The position numbers were made by a program, and so were the translations under genes. A stretch of 64,000 bases of DNA from Styela clava (lineage: Eukaryota), in contig NC_135256.1 of NCBI RefSeq assembly GCF_964204865.1, positions 4,154,001 through 4,218,000 on the forward strand. Reading direction: 5' to 3'. Shown here piece by piece: positions 9,206 to 64,000 of the stretch. Positions within the stretch are counted from its first letter, which is position 1; each line of letters begins with the position of its first letter. The notes under the pieces are model-generated. The model was not told the origin of the DNA. It worked only from the letters and a program-made list of their open reading frames with translations, and did not search any database.

Positions 9206-9603
9206 CAGTGCTCTGCAACCGGTGTGCCACGAGACGATGCCAGGTGTACCGCACAGAAATTCCACTGGATGTGTTTTGGACCTCAATAAAAGAAGAATAT
9301 AAGCACATTTCCAATGCAGCTATTGAAATATTGCTCCAGTTTTGCACAACTTATGTGTGCGAACAAAGCTTTTCCTCTTTATTACTGATCAAAAATGATA
9401 AACGATCCTGTATAAAAGATGTTGACGGCGAACTTCGAGTTGCTCTTTCACGTATTGTGCTCATTAAAACAACCACAAATCTCTAATTGAAATACAAACA
9501 TAAAACAAAGTTACACTTTGTTTTTTTCGTTTGTTGTGGTGTGCCGTCGAATTCGGCAAGATTTATAAGTGTGACGCAAGTTAAAAAAGGTTGCGGAGCA
9601 CTG
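9206..9603 (+). mobile_element. hAT (Buster/Charlie-type) deletion derivative
   Basis: TIRs CAGTGCTCTGCAACC / GGTTGCGGAGCACTG; perfect 8-bp TSD CCCTAGAA; transposase C-terminal remnant FCTTYVCEQSFS. Confidence 0.92.
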
Positions 9604-50306: not shown

Positions 50307-52382
50307 AGTCTGTATACGACCTCTAACAGACGGGACGTATGCATTGAGAATGCAAAAATTATTTAACATAAGTTGTATCGGTACATGGAATATTATTTTT
50401 AATAAGGATCCCAGTACCAGATTTAAAATATTTTGTTGAGGTTTCTTCATGGCTGATGGTATTCAGATGTGCGGTGTAACCCAGATCAGTTGCCCAAGAT
50501 TGGATGATTTCCTCCTTGAAACGATGTATTTGCTGCAAGGAGATTATATGTGGTCTGTGTCTCTGTAAAAAAAGACTCAGCTTAGGCATGTTTGTGGTAA
50601 GACCATTAACATTCATGGTAACAATACTTAGCGAGTCCATTGATATGGAGCGATTTGGAAAAATATATTAGTGCAGTATACATTACTATTAAACAAGTTG
50701 CTGAGGGATGATTCTCAGCTACTATTAATATATTACAAGTTATTATATAGTCAGTACTACCACAAATGGCTGTCCACAAAAAAGAGAATTGGAGGAATCT
50801 ACAGAATTGGACCAATATTTTAACCGAAAAGACTCATGACCTTCATCCGAACTCTCAGAGAGTTTGACCAGATTTAAAGGACCATTCCCCGAAGAGTTCT
50901 CCTCCTCGATGTTAATATTTAAACTTTCTACAACAGACTTTTTCGGGTCTCCAACCGATTGCACACTGTTTTTATTCTCCTCAACTAACTTCCCTATTAA
51001 ATTGGAGAAATTCGACTCAAGAGAGTCAGAATATTCCCTTAAGTCAGCAGGGATAGGATGTAATTCCACCCTGACAAGGCTAGAAAATTCATCAGGTTTT
51101 TTAGGTGGGATTTTATTTACATTTTTCTTTTCCGACGGTCGCTCTGACGGCGGTGGGCTAGATGCAGTTTCGGAGAAACTATTACTACAGGCGTCAATAC
51201 GGGTACATCAGGAGAGGTTTCGCTACTTGATTTCCCAGTAGATGAGATAGCTGGGAAATCAGCACACTCTCTCTGAATGTGACCAGACTTCTTACATAAA
51301 CGACAAGAAGGTGGCAGGACGCAATCTCGGGCCAAATGCCCAGACTGAAAACAGTTAAGGCAAGATTTTGTGTACAGTTCTGTGAAAAGATACGTTTTAC
51401 AACGTATTCCACAAAGCTTAATGAAATCCGGGAATTTAGAAATTTCGAAATCATCAACGATTGCTTGCACATATCCATTGTACACCCTGGTGTTTTTTAG
51501 AAAAATCTTGAAGACACGCCTAACTGTCCCAAAATTTAGGGAATTGAGCATTGTTTTTAACTGCTCCAACGTGGCTTCGGTTGGTAACCTCGCACACTTA
51601 TACGTGTGCCAGGGCCACGAGGAAAACAGAACTTCAAATTACCCAAGGGAGTGTCCAAGGTTTCTCCGACACAATGTAAAAAATTATTGCAAGTACAGCC
51701 ACCATCCGTGGACCGGAAGGTGAGGTTCCACAGGCCCTGCCGGACCGGAAAAGCGCCTTCAACAAGGGATTTAAAGGGCTGCAACTTAACTGTGGAGAAG
51801 AGTTCGAAAAACGCCGCGACGGTCGGTATGCCTTGTGATGTTACAACATTAACCGACTCGCCGCGAGGGACATCCACCCACTTTGCACTAGCTACCCGAG
51901 GTAGCGACGCTGCTACGCTCGAAAAGAGCGGCATTGGCGTCACAGTGGAACCCCGGGTGGCCATAGTAAATAAATTCTGACTGCCAGGAACACTCTGAAC
52001 TGAATCAGTGCCGAGAGGCAAGTGCGTCCTGGCAGACAAAGATACCAAGAAAACAATTCAGCAACCAGATGATCCAACGAGGGGAGAATACCATAGAATA
52101 GAAAAATACTGTAAATATTATTATAACTACTATTAGACTATATTATAACTATTCTACTATTTAGGGTAGCACAGGATCCAAAGACAGACTGGATACAAGG
52201 TATGCAACTATTTATTTAAAATGAAAAGAAAGACAGAAGATCTACAACTGCAACGATCTACTAAAAAATGGAACACAACAGTAATGCCGGGGTGACCTCA
52301 AAGAAAATACTCAAGAGAGCGACGCCACTCCCAATACACCAAGAAATCGGAGCGGGCTGGTAATGCCACAATTTAGTTGTAC
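50307..52382 (-). mobile_element. Tx1 family A 5' part, directly fused to the SL exon
   Basis: Head 52285-52382; ORF1 pieces 51557-52048, 51117-51569 and 50743-51069; EN start MDSLSIVTMNVNGL (50640). Confidence 0.9.
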
Positions 52383-52398
52383 AACCAAATACTCCAAT
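52380..52398 (-). ncRNA. Spliced-leader exon copy with its 3' end deleted
   Basis: ATTGGAGTATTTGGTTGTA equals the first 19 nt of the Halocynthia/Botryllus SL as I recall it; TTAAGGTA lost between GTA repeats. Confidence 0.85.
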
Positions 52399-52502
52399 AC
52401 CTTTTTTCGGCTCTGCCCAGGGGCAACTGGCCCAGTCCAGGGTGGTCGAACCAGTGCGCCACCAAGAGGTAGCAAAGTTTTTATTATCGAAAAAGGACTA
52501 AA
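52399..52502 (-). promoter_or_regulatory. Conserved SL upstream region (TATA deleted in this copy)
   Basis: Near-identical to 63891-64000 except that TATATAA is missing. Confidence 0.7.
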
Positions 52503-53330
52503 ACACAAATTCTTGAGAACACAATATTTAAAAAAGGCATGATGACGGGCAACGCTGGTACATCTATGGCCAAGTGGTTCAGTGCCCAAAAATGGGGGTG
52601 GGGTGGACAGACCTCGAAAAAAAAATTCGAATTTTTTTTTTTTAAAAAGGTATACCACAGGGTGAGCCCCTATCGTCCTATAAAACTGCCCTAAAATTCA
52701 CATAGGTCCAGCTACTATTTTCATAAATAAGTACATTCATCAAAAAAAAAACACTGACGAAGGGCTTGAAAATACATGAGCAATCGGGACACAGCATTTG
52801 TGTTACATGTTTATTATCTTCATGGAATCTACGGTTTCGCGTCCACAGGCCTGCTACTTTCCATCTCGTAAGTTTTATCTTCACATATCAATGATGAGCT
52901 TCAACGAATTTATTCGCTGTATCAGCAGCATATCTTGCCGCAACAGCATGCAAATTTCTTAACAACAAACTTCTTTGCTGTATCAGCAACGTATTTGGCC
53001 TAATGCTCTCGGCCATAGAATATTTTAGCTCAAATTCCAAAAGATTATTTTTGTGGCATTGTTATGACGTCACAGACGCTTCACATCGCGTCCAATTTAG
53101 TTGTTTGTTGAATCAGATTCGTAGCCCACTCGCGTTTTGGCAGGATTGCAGGGCAAACAGGCGCAGAGCCGGCTAAGAACACCTCGCAGTGCGATATTTC
53201 AGAAAAGCATGAGGGCAGGCGGTGGTCCATCTATCATGACCATGCGGGCGGGACGTGTCAAATGCCCGAAATTGGGGGAGGAGGAGTGGACAGACAGACT
53301 TGAAAATTTTTTTGTTTTGTTAATTGACAT
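52503..53330. other. Putative intergenic spacer of the SL RNA tandem repeat
   Basis: Unique, non-Tx1, non-coding ~830 bp between the putative SL intron half and the next SL promoter/exon. Confidence 0.55.
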
Positions 53331-53401
53331 ATGGCAGGGCGAGTCCCAACCACCCCACTATTGTCCTAGCCATAAATTTGAGCCACGGCTCAGAAGCTTA
53401 C
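53331..53401 (-). ncRNA. Putative SL RNA intron half, displaced from its exon
   Basis: GTAAG donor; TGAGC-CGTG-GCTCA hairpin; Sm-like AAATTTATGG; GTGGGGTG/CGCCCTGC hairpin; begins exactly after poly(A). Confidence 0.7.
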
Positions 53402-53946
53402 TTTTTTTTTTTTATAAAGTAGGCCTCAACCCCCCGATACTTACCTTGTTTTTAATACTCACTTGTTGCGGGGAGGCTGGTAGATGTTCTTCTCTTTAAG
53501 TACCTATAAGAGAGGTAAAATAAAAACACCGAAAGAAAACAGAAGTCTAGATTTGACGAACACTTCCGTGACAGGAGAGAGTTAGGAGAAATGCACCTCG
53601 ATGCACACTCATATCAACTCTCCCTGTCACGTGATGTCCGTCTCATCTAAAAAAAAAGAAATTAAACAGTAAGAGGTATAGCAGAGAATGAGAGAGAAAG
53701 AAGTTATAGAGAAATAATAATAATAAGACCTTCACCAAAAAATATAGGAGAGCCATTATTCTGGTGTATAGGGCGTTTGTGAAGTCATTTGTCCTATTAT
53801 ATTATTCTACTATAAGTTATTAGAATTATTTTAGATAGCCAGATTTAATACCTATGATAGAAATATAAATAACAGACTTGGGGAGAATAGAAGTTTTTAT
53901 AACGGTTTTTATAACAATATTTGAAACGTGAGCAGCTTTTAATATA

Positions 53947-56900
53947 TTATGTATTATACCCACATAATATTTCTTTCCAGTTGGGAACCAATTCATACTG
54001 GACAATATTTCCATACCTATTTTCACGATCCAAAAGGTGTTGATAAAACCCGTTAATTACAGATTTGATTATATTATTAGTATCGTTTGCCGTCGCATAT
54101 CGCTCGTCTCTGTCGAGAACCCTTTTCATCCCAATTATGGTGACCTTAAAAAGTTGGTAAATTTTAGGGACAGATAGAGTGCTGTTTTTGTTATAGGTGT
54201 TATAGAAAATATCTTCTATTGGAACACATACAGCACTCACACATATTTTATTTAGGATGTCCAGGATTCTCGACGACATACTACGGCAAACGTTACAACC
54301 CAAGAAAATATGCTGGGTGTTGTCTGGCCCAGAGTTGCAGAATTTGCATTCCAGTTTAAGTAACCGATTATTGTATTGACCATACTTAAATCCGGTCTGC
54401 TTCCGGCGTTTTCCAAAGAGGAAACCGTTCCGGACTGTTCTAAAAGATATCCCTTTCATAATTATAAAAATGTGTCCTATGATATCGACTGAGGAGATGA
54501 ACAGCCTCCCAATCGATATCAGTGGGAGGGTGCTCAGATCTTTCCCCAAGGAGTCTTGAGTATATGGTGCGAAGGTTGGAGGACTCCCATTCCTCGGCCG
54601 AGAAGTCCAATCTTTTAAAAAGGTTAAATCTCCTCAGCCAAGGTTCAGGTACACAGATGGAATGAGGCATAGAATTGCTGAACAAGACTGGATTTATAGA
54701 TTTAATCTTGCTGCCAAGGCTATATTGGGCCCCTCTATGCCAGAATTGACTGGGGTTAGTTAGAGAGACCAGATGTTAAAACATTTGCACTTAGCAGGCA
54801 GCAATCTTAGTCCATTCCGCCTTTATTAATGTCATCCTGGAGCATCCTCCTACTCAAGACTTCCATGGGTTCAGACGTCCATAAGAAAAAAAATACATCT
54901 CTCTATTACCTGTTCAGTTTGAGGAGGTATAAATATCGACCTCGCACTGTACAGTACCTGAGACAAAATTAGGGAGTTGATGATCGTAATTTTACCATAC
55001 TAGGAGAGAGACCTGATTTTACTAAAGTTGATTATTTTATTTATAGTTGATATTTTTTCTTGCCAAGTTTTATTAATTTTGTTCTTGCCATAATAAATAC
55101 CAAGAATTTTAACAGAGTCCTTTGCATAACGATTAGGGGGCGAGAAAGATAATAATTCCCTAGCCCGCTGATTAGTACAAAGGATCTCTGTTTTATTTTT
55201 ACTGATGGCCTGGCCAGTAGATTTATAATAAAGCTCCAATTCTTGAAAAATTGCATCGACCGAGTATACATCCGATACAACTAAAGTTGCATCGTCTGCA
55301 TACTGGTCTAGATTGTGTTGAAATGTACCTATCCGTAAACCTTTTATTGAATTATTTTACGGGTAAGGGGCTCCACGTTTATGGTGTACAGGAGCATACT
55401 CATGGGACACCCTTGACGAATGCCCCTAAGTATGTTTATCTCCTTCGTGAACGCCCCGTTAACCTCAACAACGCTAGTGATGTCTGTGTACATGGATGTT
55501 ATTAACCTCAAGGCATTCTCACCTATATTTATTCTGTTAAGAATAGATAGAAGGAGTTGATGATCAACCATGTCGATCGAATGCCTTGAGATTATCAATA
55601 GCGAAAAATGCTACGTCCGGGCATAGTACATTTTTGAGATGGACTAATTATGGAAGAGAGGGGTTCTATGAGACGTTTGGTTAAAATTTTTGCAAGGATC
55701 TTATAGTCGACGTTCAGATTTGAGATCGAACGCCAATTTCTCAAATCCGAAGCGTCGGCTTTTTTAAAAATTAAACGAATAAGGGCTTTTTTGAATGAGT
55801 CTGACAGTTTTCCAGAAATAAAATGTTATTAATCATAATAATGAACTCATTTTTAATTGTGGACCAAAACGTCTCATAAAACTCCTTTGAGAAGCCGTCA
55901 AGACCTGGCGACTTCCCGCTCTCCATTTCTCGTATGATATTAAATACATCGTCTTCAGAAATCCAATTAGAAATGGGATCCGAATCATCCTTTGTTAAAG
56001 GGGTTGAATGAGTCTGACAGTTTTCCAGAAATAAAATGTTATTAATCATAATAATGAACTCATTTTTAATTGTGGACCAAAACGTCTCATAAAACTCCTT
56101 TGAGAAGCCGTCAAGACCTGGCGACTTCCCGCTCTCCATTTCTCGTATGATATTAAATACATCGTCTTCAGAAATCCAATTAGAAATGGGATCCGAATCA
56201 TCCTTTGTTAAAGGGGTCCACTCCTTTGAGAAGCCGTCAAGACCTGGCGACTTCCCGCTCTCCATTTCCCGTGTGATATTAAATACATCGTCTTCAGAAA
56301 TCCAATTAGAAATGGGATCCGAATCATCCTTTGTTAAAGGGGTTCTATTCATTAAATCTAGATATTCTGATTGGGTTGCTATGTCGACATGCGACCTAGT
56401 TCCCCATAGCTCCGTATAGAAGCTTTGTACTAAATTTAAAATGTCATCAGGATTCGTTTTTATATTGCCCTGGTAATCTTTTATTTGGGAAATCGTCGTT
56501 TCGGATTCTCTTTTTTTATTTTAATGAAAAATATTTTCGAAGGGGTTTCATCTTCCTCAGGGCTATCGATCTTTGCTTTAAGTTTAATATAGTCTAATTT
56601 ATTTTCTCGCTGAAGAAGAATTTCCAGACGAAGCTTGGTTATAACGTTATTTTTGGTTCCTTCTTTTATCAGATGTGATGATTCCTCTTATTTTCTTTAG
56701 CCTTTTGGATGGAATAGGCTATAGTAATCTTTCGGATGCGAAATTTAACAAAGTACCACCATCTCCAATTGGTGGACCAATTCTCTATAACTATATTTGA
56801 TTAGTTCAATATATGATTTGTCATTATACAAACTGGTATTATTAGGCACCCTTGCCCCACCTAATCTTCGTAGAAGATTTTAATAATAGGACTGGGACAA

Positions 56901-57613
56901 GGGTGTGGTCAGAAACAGTGTTTATTATATGGTGGATGTCTTTGAAACAAGCCAGCAGGTTTTCAGAGATGTAAATTCTGTCTATCCTGCGTGACTGTGT
57001 TCCAATTTGGCAGGTGTAGGTTTGCCCCGTAGGATATTTTCTACGGTAGACATCCACCATACCTGAAGTTTGTAGAGTTAAGCCTAGAATTTTCTCTGCC
57101 CTAGAGAGCTTAAAATGATGTTTAATTAGAACATCTCGCTCATCTAGGATAGAGTTAAAATCGCCAGTAAGTATTATGTGAAGCAATGGATCCAAGATAT
57201 GGATCACACCGCACATCTTCTCCATGAAGTCAGTCTGGATGAGGCCTCGGACAGACGGGTACATAGGCATTGATGGTGCATAATGTATTTTTATTATAAG
57301 AAAAATCAAGTCTGTCGAGCCTATTGGGAATTAGTATATTATATACTATATTTGAACAGTGGATGTTATTTTTGATCAGAATCCCAGTACCAGACTTGAA
57401 ATATTTTATAGATGAATCTTCATGGATCATGGTAATAAGATGCGCGGTGTAACCCAGATCGGTGGCCCAAGTTTGAATGATTGCTTCCTTACAGCGATGT
57501 ATTTGCTGTAAAGAGACTATATGGGGACTGTGTCTCTGTAGCAAGAGACACAGCTTACGCCAATTAGTGCTAAGACCATTTACATTAAATGTAATGATTC
57601 TTAGCGAATCCAT
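53947..57613 (-). pseudogene. ORF2: AP endonuclease, reverse transcriptase and C-terminal Cys/His finger, frameshifted
   Basis: ITFNVNGL, GDFN, SRRIDRIY, SDH, GKSPGLDGF, GIRQGCPMS, YADD codons (~55288-55302), CKFC...HIFLGC. Confidence 0.93.
55793..56343. repeat. Near-identical internal tandem duplications (213-bp and 126-bp periods)
   Basis: TPLTKDDSDPISNWISEDDVFNI.REMESGKSPGLDGFSKE occurs three times in ORF 55771-56352. Confidence 0.95.
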
Positions 57614-57835
57614 TGGAATGGGGCGATTTGAAAAAAAATGCTAGAGCAGCATATATTATTACCAAAAAATTAACTGAGAAATGATACTCAGTCAATATTA
57701 CACAGTTACAAAGAGTTATGCAATTACCTGGCAAAAAATATTGCCAAAAATTGCTGCCCACCAAGGAGACTTTTAAAACCAATAAAGAAAAGAAAGTGGT
57801 GAGAAACAGAAAATTGGAGCTATTAATAAAAGTTA

Positions 57836-59252
57836 TTATTCCTTGAAAACAGGCGCCTCAGAAAAAACGCGAGATTTAGTTGGCGGAAGAACGGAATACG
57901 CGCCTGAAGACGAGCTCTCCCGCTCCCTCTTGTCGTCCCGTAAGGTGGGATTACCTTCAATTTGTGAAAGGTTCCAGTCCAGACCCGGTTCCCTGGTCTT
58001 TTTATGGCTGCGAAGTTTATTGCAAAACGACGCAAGATCTTCATCCATACCCTCTGAGAGTCTGGCTATATTATGATAGTCTTCTCCCAGAGTTTTATCA
58101 AACTCGATGATTTTTGCCTCATTCTCTACAAGGTTTTCCGGGTCACTCACTACATTATTATTTTCTTTATCCCCAGCTGCTACCAATCTATCATTCGGGG
58201 ATTTCGATTCCAAAGAATCAGTTATCTCCTAAATTTCAGCCGGAATAGGGTGTATGTCCACTTTAACCCGACTGAAAAATTTAGATTGATCGGCAGAAGA
58301 GTTTTTCTTACTATTATTAATATTATTTTTCTTTTCCAGCTGTCCTTGCGACGATACAGCCACCGATGTTACTTTGGTGAAGCTGTATCGCGATGGCGTC
58401 TTTGGTGCCGTTTCAGCAGAGGAACTGACTGTAGGATCAACACCAGGTGTTATGGATGGAAAATCAGTACAGTCTCGCTGTACATGGCTGGATTGTTTAC
58501 AAAGACGGTAGGACGGCGGAGAATTACACTCTCTGGCCAGATGACCAGTCTGAAAACAATTCAGACAAGTCTTGATGTAAAGTTCTGGTGGTAAGTACAT
58601 TTTACACCGAAGTCCGCCAACAGTGATGAAGTCGGGAAACCTGGATTTATCAAAATCATCAAAGATGGCTTGTACGAAGCCGTTGTACACCTTGGTGTTT
58701 TAAGGTATACTCGAACGACTCTACGTACTGTACCACAACCAAACGAGTTTAAAATGGACTTCACTTGCTCTTGCGTGGCTTCTGTGGGAATACCACGCAC
58801 GCTAATGCGGGTCTCAGGGCCACGCGGCAAAGAAAAATTAATTATACCTAAAGGGGTATCTACTTGACTCCCCATACTATTAAGAAAAAGATCTCGTGTT
58901 GGTGTTCCCTCCACAGGCTGAAACGTCAAATTCCAAGTGCTCTGACGGATGGGAAAGACATCAGCTACTAGGTTTTTATAAGGACGTAACTTATCCACGG
59001 TGCTGAAAAGCTCATAAAAGGCTGAAACCGTCGAGATGTCTCTAGATGTTGTAAATCTATCGACTCGCCTCTGCTAACTTCGACACCTTTCACGTTAGCT
59101 ACCTTTGGAAGTGAGGCAGCTACGTTGGAGAAAAGGGAGCTAGACGTTGAAGGCTGCGTAGTCGGCATGGCGGGTAACCCAGCAGAAACCTGTCTGCCGA
59201 GGACACTATGACGCGAGTCAGCGCCAAGAGCCATGTGTGTCCTGGCAGACAT
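57836..59252 (-). pseudogene. ORF1 (gag-like, two CCHC knuckles), frameshifted
   Basis: MSARTH start; CLNCFQTGHLAREC; four consecutive ORF pieces. Confidence 0.9.
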
Positions 59253-59557
59253 ACAAAACAAGACTATTCACTACTATAGAAAAGGTTTATTACAGGAGGA
59301 GGTAACTATTACTAGAAGAGATACCTATTTAAGCTACCTTTTATGATAGAACAGGAACAGTAACAAACTCAGGACTATAGAAGGTAACTCAGACAACACA
59401 CAAAGCAGAATCAAACAACAGCGGTAACGATCTATTAAATAAAGAATCGCTACGGAAACGCCAGGGTGGCCTCAAAGAAAATACAAAAAGGAGAGGCCAC
59501 TCACTCCCAATACACCGAGAATTGGAGCGGGCTGGCAAGACCACAATTTAGTTGTAC

Positions 59558-61278
59558 TTTTAAGTAATTGTTTTAAATGTAGGCTCCTGATGGGCGCCAG
59601 ATTCTCCCATTCATTCTTTCCACGCTTTTTAGCTATTACTGTTGCCTTGGCATCTTTCAGTTTATTATGGAAAAAAACTTCTCTTACAGCAGGACTACCC
59701 TCGATATCAGAACACTGCCAATCTGGGCCCGGTTCCTCTGCTTTCTTATGGCTACAAAGTTTTTTACGAAATGTTTCAAGATCTTCATCTGAACCCTCTG
59801 AGAGTCTCGCTATATTAAAACAATCTTCTCCCAGAGGGTTATCCAGTTCAACGATTTTATCTTCTTTTTTTTTTCAAGGTTTTCCGGGTCAACTGCCAAT
59901 TTTTCATCTTCCAGATTCGGTCTCTCAGATTCTAATGAATCCGAGAAATCACAAGCTTCAGCCGGAGTAGGGTGTACGTCCACCCTAACCCGGCCGAGAG
60001 ACTTAGATTTATCAGCAGCAGCAGTAGATTTTTCTTTTGTTCTATTATTAGTTTTATTTTTCAGCTGATCCTGTGATGATACAGCCACAGATGTTGATTT
60101 GGTGAAACTGTATCTACCAGCCGTCTTTGCAACAATCTTGGCAGGAGAGTTAACCTGAAGTTGAGGCTGGCTACTTCGTTCCACTGCTGGTGTTATTGCA
60201 GTGAAGTCAGTGCACTCTCGCTGCACATGGCCGGATTTTTTGCAAAGACGGCAGGTCGGAGGCATTACACACTCTCTAGCCAGATGACCTGCCTGAAAAC
60301 AATTCAAGCAGGACTTGGTATAGAGTTCGGGAGGTAAGTATGTTTTGTAACGTAGTCCACCAACATTGACGAAATCGGGAAAGTTGGACTTCTCGAAGTC
60401 GTCAATGATGTCTTGTACGTTGCCATTATACACCTTGCTGTTACGTAGATATATTTTGAAAACACGCCTCACTTTGCCACAGTTAAAAGAGTTGAGCATT
60501 GTTGTTAGTTGCTTGACTGTGGCTTCAGTGGGAATACCACGCACGCTAATGCGGGTCCCTGGACCACGGGGCAGAGAAAAATTAATAACACCTAACGGGG
60601 TTTCTAGTTTACTACCAACACAGTCAAGAAATTGATCCCGCGTTGGTCGTCCGTCAGTAGGTTGAAAAGACAAATTCCAAACACCCTGGCGGATTGGAAA
60701 AATTCCACCAACTAGGATTCTGTAAGGACGTAGTTTTTCAACAGTATAAAATAGATTAAAAAATTCCGAGACGATCGAGATGTCGTTGGTTGTCATGACA
60801 TCGATCGACTCGCCCCTGCTGACTTCCACACATCTCACGTTTGCTACTTTTGCAAGTGAGGCAGCAACGCTAGAAAAAAAAGAGGCCTAGATGTTGAAGG
60901 CTGTGTAGTCGGCATTGCAGATGTTAAAGCAGGAACCTGTCTACCAAGAACACTCTGACGAGAGTCAGTGCCGAGAGGCATACGTGTTCTGGCAGACATT
61001 AAAGACTATTTATAAACACGAAGAGAACTATTTACTATATGAAGTTACTCTACAAGAAGACACCTATTTAAACTACCTTTTATGGTATTTCAACAACAGC
61101 AAAAACTTAGGACTATATATGTCAAACTATGTAACACACAGATAGAAAAACAACAGCGGTAACGAAAACGCCGAGGGGGGAGGGGGGGGGGGGTTTCAAG
61201 AAAGATTCCAAGAAGGAGAGGCCGCTCCCATTACACCGAGAATTGGAGCAGGTCGGCAAGGCCTCAATTTAGTTGTAC
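59558..61278 (-). mobile_element. Family A element lacking almost all of ORF2
   Basis: GTACAAC head at 61278; 342-aa ORF1 piece 59810-60838; vestigial tail (GCCTAC plus A-rich) at 59558-59585. Confidence 0.85.
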
Positions 61279-63866
61279 TTTTTTTTTTATAGTAGGCCTC
61301 GACCCACCGATACTCACCTTGTTTTTATACTCACGTGTTGCAAAGGAGGCTTGTAGATGTTATTTTCTTTAAATACCTGTTAAAGAGGTAAAATATAATG
61401 CACCAAACAAAAGATAAACAAATTTTAAGATTCAGCGAACACTTCCGTGACAGAAGAGAGTTTGGAGAAATGCACCTTGACGCACACTCATGTAAACTCT
61501 CCCTGTCACGTGATGCTCGTCTCCTCTAGGAAAAAAATACAAGAGAAAAGAAAGAAAAAAAAAAGAATTGAGAGAGAGAAAAGGTAAGATATTAATAACA
61601 AAGGAAAGTATAAAAGAATACATTAATCATAAGAATTATACAGAAATACCGTTACCAAAAAAAGCCATAATTCTTGGTGTATATGGCGTTTGTAATAGAT
61701 AGAAATTTGCCTCGCTTATATTATGTTATATTTTATTATACCAGTATTAATATAAGACCTAAGTGTTCCTTTCATAAGCTTTGTTTTTGCTGCTGCTGCT
61801 GCCTTGGCCTCCACGTTGATACATAATTTGAAGCAGTATAGAAAAAAAATACCAGTTTGGAAAATATTGCCAATGTAGATTTACTGTGGGAAGATCCTGA
61901 GTAGCTGATATTAAACTATTGAAATTAATATGGGAAGAGTCATATACCTTCCTGGAACAAATCTTGCCACAAATGAGTGCCCACCAGGTATACTTTCAAA
62001 ACCACTATGAAGAAGAAAATTGTGAAAAGAATGCAATTGAAGGTAGTCAGATGATTATTTTTTTATTTATTTATTCTTCACGCCCGGCTTCTCGGACTCC
62101 AGCGAATCCGAGATATCACAAGCGTCAGTCGGAATAGGGTGTATGTCCACCCTAACCCGACCGAGAGACTTAGATTTACCAGCAGCAGCAGATTTTTCCT
62201 TTATTTAAATATTTTTATTTTTCAGCCGATCCTGTGATATTACAGCTGCAGATGTTATGTTGGTAGAGCTGTATCTACCAGACGTCTTTGCAACAACCTT
62301 GGCAGGAGAGTTAACCTGGAGTTGAGGCTCGCTACTTCGTTCCACTGCTGGTGTTATTGCAGGGAAGTCAGTGCACTCTCGCTGCACATGGCCGGATTTT
62401 TTGCAAAGACGGCAGGACGGAGGCATCACACACTCTCTAACCAGATGAACCGCCTGAAAACAATTCAAGCAGGATTTGGTATAGAGTTCGGGAGGTAAGT
62501 ATGTTTTGCAACGTAGTCCAACAGCATTGCCGAAATCGGGAAAGTTGGACTTCTCAGAAGTCGTCAATGATGGCTTGTACGTAGCCGTTATACACATTGG
62601 TGTTACGTAGGTATATTTTAAAAACATGCCGCACCTTGCCACAGTTAAAAGAGTTGAGCAGTGTTGTTAATCGCTCGACTGTGGCTTCAGTCGGAATACC
62701 ACGCACGCTAATGCGGGTTCCAGGACCGCGAGGCAGGGAGAGATTAATGGTACCTAATGGAGTATAAATTTTACTACCAACACTTTCAAGAAATGTATCT
62801 CGTGTTGGTCGTCCATCCGTGGGTTGGAAAGTCAAATTCCAAATACCCTGGCGGATTGGAAAAATTTCTCCGACTAGGGTTTTATATGGGCGTAGTTTTT
62901 CCACAGTACTAAATAGATCAAAGAATTCCGAGACGGTCGAGATGTCCTTTGTTGTGATGACATCGATCGACTCGCCTCTGCTGACTTCAACACATCTAAC
63001 GTTAGCTACCTTAGGAATAGAGGCAGCAACTCTAGAGAAAAGAGGCCTGGATGTTGGAGGCTGTGAAATCGGCACGGCAGATGTTGCAGCAGGAACTTGT
63101 CTGCCGAGGACACTCTGACGCGAGTCAGTGCCGAGAGGCATGTGTGTCCTGGCGGACATAAAAAAATTATCTACGAATATGAAAAAAACTACTTACTATT
63201 ACAATCGAAATTTACTATACGAGAAGAGGTACTAAACTATTATTTATGGTAGTAGAGGGACAGTAAAAAAAAAAACAGGACTACATAAGTTAAATAGTAC
63301 AACACAAACCAAGTAGAAACAAAAGCGGTTTTAGGGAACAATATGTTTTTTTGCTATAATTTCTGTATTGCTGTTGTTTCTGATCTGATCTTATGAAGAA
63401 GACATACTCCTGGTACCGAATACATATATTGCAATTGTATATTTACAAATACAAAGAACAGTTCCAAGTCATGACTGATAAGTCACATAAAATCAAAGTT
63501 TCACTGCAAGCCCGAGTTCGTTAATTACTTGTTCATCGTTATCCTTTCTTTTCTCTCCTAACGATTGGTCGCTTTTATGCTGGTTTTGGTATCCTTAGGG
63601 CATGACGCGTTATCGTCATCGTACCTTACAGGACGTCTAATTGTTACGTATTTTATGACTGAGAGATTGCTTCTAATTTTAAGATTAGTATGACTTCAAG
63701 TCTAAACACGTAACTTAACCAAAACCAGCAAAATTACCCAATATCCTATACGGTAACGATCTATAAAAGAAACGCCGAGAGGGCCTCAAGAAATTCCAAG
63801 AAGGAGAGGCCACTCCCAATACACCAAGAATTGGAGCGGGCTGGCAATGCCACAATTTAGTTGTAC
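61279..63866 (-). mobile_element. Family A element fused to the SL exon: head, ORF1, 3' UTR and poly(A), with ORF2 deleted
   Basis: Head 63770-63866; ORF1 62205-63159; hairpin ~61433-61521; poly(A) 61279-61288; foreign inserts ~61780-62080 and ~63330-63750. Confidence 0.85.
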
Positions 63867-63890
63867 CTTAATACAAACAAATTTTCCAAT
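63867..63890 (-). ncRNA. Spliced-leader exon (24 nt)
   Basis: ATTGGAAAATTTGTTTGTATTAAG followed by GT; 21/24 identical to the recalled stolidobranch SL ATTGGAGTATTTGGTTGTATTAAG. Confidence 0.85.
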
Positions 63891-64000
63891 ACCTTTTTCC
63901 GGCCCTGCCCAGGGCTTATATACCACTGGCCCGGTCCAGGGTGGTCGAACCAGTGCGCCACTAAGAGGTAGCAAAGTTTTTATTATCGAGAAAGGACTAA
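63891..64000 (-). promoter_or_regulatory. SL RNA gene promoter region with TATA box
   Basis: TATATAA at 63916-63922, i.e. -32 to -26 from the exon start; block conserved with 52399-52502. Confidence 0.72.

What the first reader, a model, noticed from the sequence alone, without database searches (positions are those of the whole stretch)
52285..64000. Tx1-clade retrotransposons that target the exon/intron junction of tunicate spliced-leader RNA genes and stack into arrays
Seen, reading the minus strand: promoter+TATA > 24-nt SL exon ...TTAAG (63890-63867) | element...A(n) | element...A-rich | element...A12 | GTAAGC-hairpin-Sm-hairpin (53401-53331) > ~830-bp spacer > same promoter > SL exon (52398) | more elements. 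Removing 53402-63866 rejoins AAG|GTAAG and gives a plausible ~95-nt SL RNA gene in a ~1-kb tandem unit. Established: Tx1-clade elements often target multicopy RNA genes (Keno/U2, Mutsu/5S). The SL-specific elements I know of (CRE/SLACS/CZAR in trypanosomatids, NeSL in nematodes) use a restriction-like endonuclease. Inference: this is an independent, AP-endonuclease-based SL-targeting lineage in a chordate. I know of no description of it but cannot search.
Basis: partly seen in the sequence, partly recalled or inferred. Interest (0 to 1): 0.95.

Follow-up and report, generated by a model that had tools for sequence, protein, structure and literature searches.

The report
Retrotransposons targeting sea-squirt spliced-leader genes
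Several families of jumping genes in a sea-squirt genome insert at one exact spot in the small RNA genes that supply the spliced leader for messenger RNAs, and fill about four in ten of those genes. Until now, this target was known only for unrelated elements in trypanosomes and nematodes.

Summary
The 24-nt exon is the published spliced leader (SL) of stolidobranch ascidians. The genome has a single SL RNA gene array (C8, minus strand, 1,634-bp unit). It holds 64 intact genes and 48 genes split by a poly(A)-ended insert.

- **Insertion sites.** 44 inserts sit exactly at AAG|GTAAGT, the exon/intron junction. Three sit 5 nt further on (GTAAG|TTTCTG), and one has a 4-nt deletion.
- **The elements.** They are non-LTR retrotransposons. 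ORF1 carries CCHC knuckles. ORF2 (~1,160 aa) has an N-terminal AP endonuclease plus a reverse transcriptase, and aligns end to end with L1 ORF2p.
- **Diversity.** There are at least four autonomous A subfamilies, plus B and C, which are only ~40% identical to A in protein. There are also three abundant families that carry ORF1 only.
- **The window.** It is the old, degenerate edge of the array. Stacking is real.

New here: the first ~37 nt of A and B elements are complementary to the SL exon. Ectopic copies carry an SL head without the promoter. Element tails resemble the target flank. Assignment to the Tx1 clade, rather than the L1 group generally, could not be tested.

I found no published description. 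Another first-stage note in this scan (s1-822871) saw the same array.

The parts
63891..64000 (-). Promoter and upstream spacer of an SL RNA gene. The TATA box TATATAAG is at 63922-63915.
   Evidence: 96% identical to positions 1528-1634 of the canonical 1,634-bp unit.
63867..63890 (-). SL exon, 24 nt. It is a variant with 3 changes from the canonical ATTGGAGTATTTGGTTGTATTAAG.
   Evidence: The canonical sequence is the published stolidobranch SL.
63827..63890 (-). SL exon plus the first ~40 nt of the element. On one RNA they would form a long hairpin, because the element's 5' end is the reverse complement of the SL exon.
   Evidence: computed on intact A copies with the canonical SL. SL nt 1-20 are all paired, at -21.8 kcal/mol, and 0 of 1000 shuffles fold as well.
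61279..63866 (-). Element 1. A degenerate ORF1-only (S2-like) element with a full 5' end (GTACAAC...) and an A10 tail at 61288-61279.
   Evidence: 87-91% identical to family S2.
59558..61278 (-). Element 2. The 5' 1.6 kb of an S2-like element. It starts right after the tail of element 1 and has an A-rich end.
   Evidence: 83% identical to S2 positions 1-1605.
53402..59557 (-). Element 3. A full-length (6,156 nt) degenerate A-type element with broken ORF1 and ORF2, and an A12 tail at 53413-53402.
   Evidence: 75-86% identical to A1 and S3.
53414..53520 (-). Conserved 3' module of A-type elements. It holds a pyrimidine tract plus YAG, a ~45-nt block, and two GTRAGTA motifs. The second motif, AAG|GTAAGTATCGG, resembles the target.
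53331..53401 (-). Intron part of the split SL RNA gene: the GTAAGC donor, a hairpin, the Sm-like site AAUUUAUGG, and a second hairpin.
52399..53330 (-). Spacer with a ~665-bp deletion, followed by a second promoter that has lost its TATA box.
52381..52398 (-). Second SL exon, cut back to 18 nt (ATTAAG is missing).
52285..52380 (-). Start of the next stack, an A2-like element beginning ACAACTAAATTG. The stack runs on to about 21025.

Best explanation
These are site-specific non-LTR retrotransposons of the L1/Tx1 group. They live in the spliced-leader RNA gene array of a stolidobranch ascidian.

Shown:
- ORF2 carries an N-terminal AP-type endonuclease and a reverse transcriptase.
- Every insert ends in poly(A) that abuts GTAAGT (families A, B and the ORF1-only families) or TTTCTGAG (family C).
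- 5' ends are full length or truncated.
- About 42% of SL genes are occupied.

Inferred mechanism:
- The endonuclease nicks the bottom strand opposite AAG|GTAAGT (site 1), or 5 nt downstream (site 2).
- The nick primes reverse transcription on the poly(A) tail.
- New copies usually end flush with the SL exon.

Inferred, about even odds: resident copies are transcribed from the SL gene's own promoter as an SL-exon-headed RNA. The 5' UTR of that RNA folds back on the SL exon, and the SL head guides a seamless 5' join.

The ORF1-only families presumably borrow ORF2 protein from the autonomous ones.
For: - **Site.** 33 of 37 genes are split at one place in 264 kb. Genome-wide there are 48 junctions, all in the array: 44 at |GTAAGT, 3 at |TTTCTGAG and 1 at |GTTTCTG.
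- **Specificity.** 38 of 42 SL-to-A junctions lie in the array.
- **Independent events.** More than 12 distinct families or truncation forms share the site.
- **Domains.** PF03372 plus PF00078, with CCHC in ORF1.
- **Group.** L1 ORF2p is the best solved match, E = 7e-70 over residues 12-868.
- **Age of the habit.** A, B and C are ~40% identical yet form one clade against database homologues.
- **Recent activity.** ORFs are intact and copies are 98-100% identical.
- **SL head.** Ectopic A copies at C4:3646404 and C18:14011673 start inside the SL and lack the promoter.
- **Hairpin.** The anti-SL hairpin occurs in both A and B.
- **The SL itself.** It is the published leader.
Against: - No RNA reads could be laid, so neither co-transcription nor use of the SL in this animal was seen directly.
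- One A1 copy on C5 starts at GTACAAC after ...CAAAG with no SL head. An SL head is therefore not obligatory.
- Some near-identical copies may have spread by unequal crossing-over rather than by new insertion. ins13 and ins18 share a mutated exon.
- Endonuclease specificity is inferred from the junctions, not assayed.
- The Tx1 clade was not tested against references.
Confidence: 0.85

Rival explanations
1. The SL head on element RNA comes from ordinary SL trans-splicing onto an acceptor at the element's 5' edge, not from transcription by the SL gene promoter. Targeting is still done by the endonuclease.
For: Hundreds of other repeat families elsewhere in the genome also begin with the SL sequence. 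This shows that SL-bearing RNAs of many elements get reverse-transcribed. In the array the base before GTACAAC is always AG, the end of the SL exon itself or poly(A)+G.
Against: Array copies sit directly behind a TATA-bearing SL promoter. The product of the two routes is identical, so sequence alone cannot separate them. A 5' UTR selected to pair with the SL exon fits either route.
Confidence: 0.3
2. Integration is guided by homology rather than by a sequence-specific endonuclease. An SL-headed cDNA recombines with SL genes through the 24-nt head and the target-like tail.
For: The SL head on ectopic copies and the target-like tails: GTRAGTATC in A, CTCTGATCCG in B and C.
Against: - The poly(A) tail always lies between the tail motif and the target, so the 3' join is not made by homology.
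- 5'-truncated copies with no head share the same 3' junction (ins04 and ins07).
- A copy with early polyadenylation and no tail motif uses the same site (ins22).
- Off-target copies sit after ...AAAG|GT and ...TTAAG|GT.
Confidence: 0.07
3. One or a few chance insertions were multiplied by unequal crossing-over in the tandem array. There is no targeting.
For: Some neighbouring units look like segmental duplicates. The same stack occurs at C8:4353574 and C8:4473965, and ins13 and ins18 share an exon mutation.
Against: - Families with no nucleotide similarity and ~40% protein identity occupy the same nucleotide.
- 5' truncation points differ, and poly(A) lengths run from 7 to 51 for single inserts.
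- Family C uses a second site 5 nt away.
- The elements are almost absent elsewhere in 377 Mb.
Confidence: 0.03

Closest known systems
Target-specific Tx1-clade LINEs: Keno (U2 snRNA genes), Mutsu (5S rRNA genes), U5-, satellite- and transposon-specific families (Kojima and Fujiwara 2004; Kojima 2015, PMC4494074)
   Same: - ORF1 plus an ORF2 with an N-terminal AP endonuclease and RT, a C-terminal Cys/His motif and a poly(A) tail.
- Precise insertion into tandem small-RNA genes that are transcribed from snRNA-type promoters.
- Head-to-tail stacks.
   Different: - The target is the SL RNA gene at its splice donor, which is not on the published target lists I read.
- The host is a tunicate.
- The 5' UTR is antisense to the target exon.
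- Clade membership was not tested by phylogeny.
SL-gene-specific elements CRE1/CRE2, SLACS, CZAR (trypanosomatids) and NeSL-1 (nematodes)
   Same: They live only in spliced-leader RNA genes.
   Different: The papers I read place those elements among the restriction-like-endonuclease elements of early-branching clades (PMC4640811). By my recollection they insert inside the SL exon. Here the endonuclease is AP-type, and the site is the exon/intron junction or 5 nt into the intron. The resemblance is therefore a convergent habit.
R1 and R2 in 28S rRNA genes of arthropods
   Same: - R2 occupies a sizeable fraction of rDNA units (10-20% in Drosophila, abstract) and is co-transcribed with the host gene (PMC4494074; abstract).
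- That R1 and R2 use two separate nearby sites in 28S is my recollection.
   Different: - Different target and different clades.
- No self-cleaving ribozyme was detected here (Rfam).
HAL1, the ORF1-only derivative of mammalian L1 (from my own knowledge)
   Same: Families S1-S3 keep the 5' UTR, an intact ORF1 (477-503 aa) and the 3' end, but have no ORF2. They outnumber the autonomous elements.
   Different: They are site-specific, and they are not simple deletion products of the present autonomous families (60% coverage at ~77% identity).

Membership tests
AP-endonuclease-type non-LTR retrotransposon (LINE) | ORF2 with an N-terminal Exo_endo_phos domain followed by a reverse transcriptase | tested here: met
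   PF03372 plus PF00078 in A1, A2, A3, B and C.
AP-endonuclease-type non-LTR retrotransposon (LINE) | Poly(A) 3' end, variable 5' truncation, no terminal repeats | tested here: met
   Poly(A) of 7-51 nt on single inserts. The 5'-truncated copies ins04, ins07 and the C copies share the 3' junction.
L1 group (L1 plus Tx1 clades) | ORF2 collinear with L1 ORF2p through the endonuclease, RT and the region beyond, and closer to L1 than to the R1 or I groups | tested here: met
   L1 ORF2p matches at E = 7e-70 over residues 12-868. L1 endonuclease structures match. The R1Bm and TRAS1 endonucleases do not reach E = 0.01.
L1 group (L1 plus Tx1 clades) | C-terminal Cys/His motif (zf-RVT type) | tested here: inconclusive
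   CX2CX8HX4C is visible in the A/B alignment. zf-RVT matches are below the cut-off. Nearest database relatives carry PF13966.
Tx1 clade | RT domain groups with reference Tx1 families (Tx1L, Keno, Mutsu, Kibi, Koshi) rather than with L1 | not testable with these tools
   No named Tx1 or Repbase sequences were within reach. All near homologues are unnamed.
Tx1 clade | Sequence-specific insertion into a repeated target | tested here: met
Tx1 clade | ORF1 of the RRM-plus-CCHC type. This criterion is recalled from Khazina and Weichenrieder 2009 and was not read here. | tested here: inconclusive
   Two CCHC knuckles are found. The RRM is suggested only by eye.
CRE / NeSL (SL-specific early-branching elements) | Restriction-like (PD-(D/E)xK) endonuclease C-terminal to the RT | tested here: not met
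   The endonuclease is N-terminal and AP-type. No other nuclease domain was found.
Spliced-leader RNA gene (the target) | Exon identical to a leader found on mRNA 5' ends, followed by a GT donor and an Sm-like site, in a tandem array | tested here: met
   The exon equals the SL recorded for Botryllus, Halocynthia, Boltenia, Herdmania and Polyandrocarpa. Donor, hairpins and AAUUUAUGG are present. There are 64 intact copies at a 1,634-bp period. Use on mRNAs of this animal was not tested.

The most novel reading that the evidence does not exclude
The element and the SL gene work as one RNA unit. In this reading the SL promoter makes an SL-exon-headed element RNA, and the 5' UTR of that RNA has been selected in two unrelated families to pair with the whole SL exon. 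In A-type elements the conserved 3' module (acceptor, ~45-nt block, two GTRAGT donors) would lie just upstream of the retained Sm site. That would let the element body be spliced out, or let the occupied gene still donate a longer leader. Occupied SL genes would then not be simply dead.
Probability: 0.12. Interest if true: 0.85.

Novelty: new variant of a known kind. Interest (0 to 1): 0.68.

Why it matters
- **Convergence.** Living in the SL gene has been reached twice by unrelated machinery: restriction-like endonuclease elements in trypanosomes and nematodes, and AP-endonuclease L1/Tx1-like elements in a chordate.
- **A system for studying targeting.** Several diverged endonucleases are aimed at one 10-bp site, and a sister lineage is aimed 5 bp away. 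This suits work on how AP endonucleases acquire sequence specificity.
- **A testable case of promoter and leader capture.** The anti-SL 5' UTR, the SL-headed ectopic copies and the target-like tails bear directly on how a retrotransposon might use a host small-RNA promoter and leader.
- **Cost to the host.** About 42% of the genes for an RNA needed by trans-spliced mRNAs are interrupted, which raises the question of how the host keeps enough working copies.

Tried and rejected
- **Reads.** SL use and element transcripts were not seen directly.
- **Genome letters.** Flanks of copies outside the array could be read only through 35-place patterns.
- **Rfam.** No SL RNA family and no HDV-like or other ribozyme in the window or in two loci with intact elements.
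- **Naming the clade.** Two word-index searches, the exhaustive representative search, a cluster look-up and the Atlas returned only unnamed relatives at 29-45% identity.
- **Target of the related clusters.** I tested whether the clusters at C4:23.29-23.47 Mb and C6:19.27-19.57 Mb sit in U4 or U2 arrays. They do not.
- **A poor pattern.** The pattern had too short an anchor. The control count was high, so only its exact matches were used.
- **Order of insertion in stacks.** Element 1 in the window is 87% identical to modern S2 and element 2 is 83%. This weakly favours newest-nearest-the-exon, but it is not decisive.
Full report
**The sequence as described.** On the minus strand the window shows a TATA-bearing promoter and then a 24-nt exon ending TTAAG at 63890-63867. 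Directly after it comes an element beginning GTACAAC. Three elements follow head to tail: 63866-61279 ending in A10, 61278-59558 with an A-rich end, and 59557-53402 ending in A12. Next comes GTAAGC, a hairpin, AAUUUAUGG and a second hairpin at 53401-53331. A spacer follows, then a second promoter without its TATA box, and a second exon cut back to 18 nt at 52398-52381, joined to ACAACTAAATTG. The rest of the window is a same-strand graveyard of degenerate copies of the same families, with only three remnants of the host unit.

**What the exon is.** The major form in the genome, ATTGGAGTATTTGGTTGTATTAAG, is the spliced leader recorded from mRNA 5' ends of Botryllus, Halocynthia, Boltenia, Herdmania and Polyandrocarpa (Front Genet 2013, PMC3795323 and its supplement). 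The genome is therefore that of a stolidobranch ascidian. The window lies at C8:4154001-4218000 in a 377-Mb assembly. The intact gene has a TATA box about 30 nt upstream, the 24-nt exon, GTAAGT, a hairpin, an Sm-like AAUUUAUGG and a second hairpin. It repeats every 1,634 bp. All 64 intact genes lie on C8 minus, between 4.337 and 4.610 Mb.

**Targeting.** I joined the window to the next 200 kb.
- Of 37 promoter-plus-exon copies, 33 are split. Thirty have the element flush after TTAAG, and three have small losses of exon sequence. The far side is always poly(A) followed by the intron.
- Genome-wide there are 48 poly(A)-to-intron junctions, all in this array: 44 at |GTAAGT, 3 at |TTTCTGAG and 1 at |GTTTCTG. 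About 42% of the genes are therefore occupied.
- The three |TTTCTGAG junctions belong to family C. Their differently 5'-truncated copies sit after GTAAG, so this lineage uses a second site 5 nt downstream.
- Of 42 junctions between the SL exon and an A-type 5' end, 38 are in the array. ORF2 DNA of the A subfamilies is almost confined to it.
- Two off-target A copies sit after ...CAAAG| and ...GGTTAAG|. This hints that AAG|GT is the core of the site.

**What the inserts are.**
- Full-length copies are about 6 kb. ORF1 is ~485 aa with two CCHC knuckles. ORF2 is ~1,160 aa with an N-terminal AP endonuclease and a reverse transcriptase.
- ORF2 aligns with L1 ORF2p over residues 12-868 at E = 7e-70, while the R1Bm and TRAS1 endonucleases do not match. 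This places the elements in the L1 group.
- Nearest database relatives are unnamed, 29-45% identical, and often carry the zf-RVT domain. I could not test Tx1 against L1.
- There are four autonomous A subfamilies (68-76% identical in DNA), plus B and C. B and C have no DNA similarity to A and are about 40-44% identical in protein. There are also three ORF1-only families of 2.6-2.8 kb.
- The six ORF2 proteins form one clade against database homologues. Related copies elsewhere in this genome could not be included.
- Many copies have intact frames and are 98-100% identical.
- One S2 copy, polyadenylated early and lacking the usual tail, still uses the site (ins22). The poly(A) tail therefore suffices for priming.

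1. The first 12 nt of every A-type element pair with SL nt 9-20. A CUCCAAU segment about 30 nt in pairs with SL nt 1-7. The SL-plus-element hairpin folds at -21.8 kcal/mol, and none of 1000 shuffles matches it. Family B, unrelated in sequence, carries its own anti-SL segment (-19.3 kcal/mol; 8 of 1000 shuffles and 0 of 230 other windows fold as well). The three variant positions in A keep pairing as G·U.
2. Ectopic A copies on C4 and C18, and a copy just upstream of the window, begin 0-2 nt inside the SL and lack the promoter. Element RNA can therefore carry the leader. One copy on C5 does not.
3. A-type 3' ends hold a conserved pyrimidine tract plus YAG, a ~45-nt block and two GTRAGTA motifs. 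The last motif is AAG|GTRAGTATC, against the target AAG|GTAAGTTTC. B and C tails end CTCTGATCCG, against the intron sequence TTCTGAGCCG just past site 2. These may be fossils of read-through into the flank, or aids to docking.

**Mechanism.**
- Shown: the anatomy and the junctions.
- Inferred: a sequence-specific bottom-strand nick and priming on poly(A).
- About even odds: transcription from the SL promoter, with the SL head guiding the 5' join, as proposed for R2 and discussed for Tx1-type elements (PMC4494074). Trans-splicing would give the same RNA.
- Unequal crossing-over also spreads copies. It cannot explain unrelated families at one nucleotide.

**Novelty.** In the papers I could search, SL-specific elements are of the restriction-like type. 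Listed Tx1 targets are U2, U5, 5S, satellites, transposons and microsatellites. Repbase Reports are not searchable here. Another first-stage note of this scan (s1-822871) describes the same array from a neighbouring piece.

Noticed in passing
Genome-wide, e.g. C1:7111, C1:20651276 and 20658402, C2:821435, C3:6988142, C4:24682333, C10:11724766: About 480 copies of the SL 3' part lie outside the array, without the promoter. They are followed by a few recurrent repeat families (starting GTAGATTTTCC, GTGTATAATTAATC or ATCTTTGTTAACAG), often as same-strand pairs 5-7 kb apart. Many other mobile elements in this genome therefore carry an SL head.
   Followed up: partly
C4:23.29-23.47 Mb and C6:19.27-19.57 Mb (plus strand): These are clusters of elements 67-70% identical in ORF2 DNA to A1, which is as close as the SL-specific subfamily A3. 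No SL match was listed there, though the listings were truncated. Their target is unknown. It is not the U4 arrays (C4:20.09-20.16 Mb, C10:7.36-7.43 Mb) and not the U2 array (C6:17.53-17.79 Mb).
   Followed up: partly
C8:4247853-4250712 (L003:9853 to L004:2712, minus strand): A chimeric insert. The first ~57 nt are a family B 5' end, fused to a 5'-truncated A3 element (99.9% identical to A3). This may be a template switch during reverse transcription.
   Followed up: no
window 55791-56216: Two identical 213-nt tandem copies, with a third partial copy, lie inside the degenerate ORF2 of element 3.
   Followed up: no
C8:4135970-4136004 (plus strand, about 18 kb before the window): An SL-headed A-type 5' end in the opposite orientation, without the promoter. 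Degenerate ORF2 pieces on the plus strand lie at C8:4113731-4118812. The element graveyard therefore continues upstream of the window with inverted polarity.
   Followed up: no
L012:8240-8310 and 9500-9560 (minus strand): Each 1,634-bp SL unit holds two A-run/T-run blocks and two copies of a ~120-nt segment (gtccacccc...catcatgcctttt). The spacer is therefore itself internally repeated.
   Followed up: no
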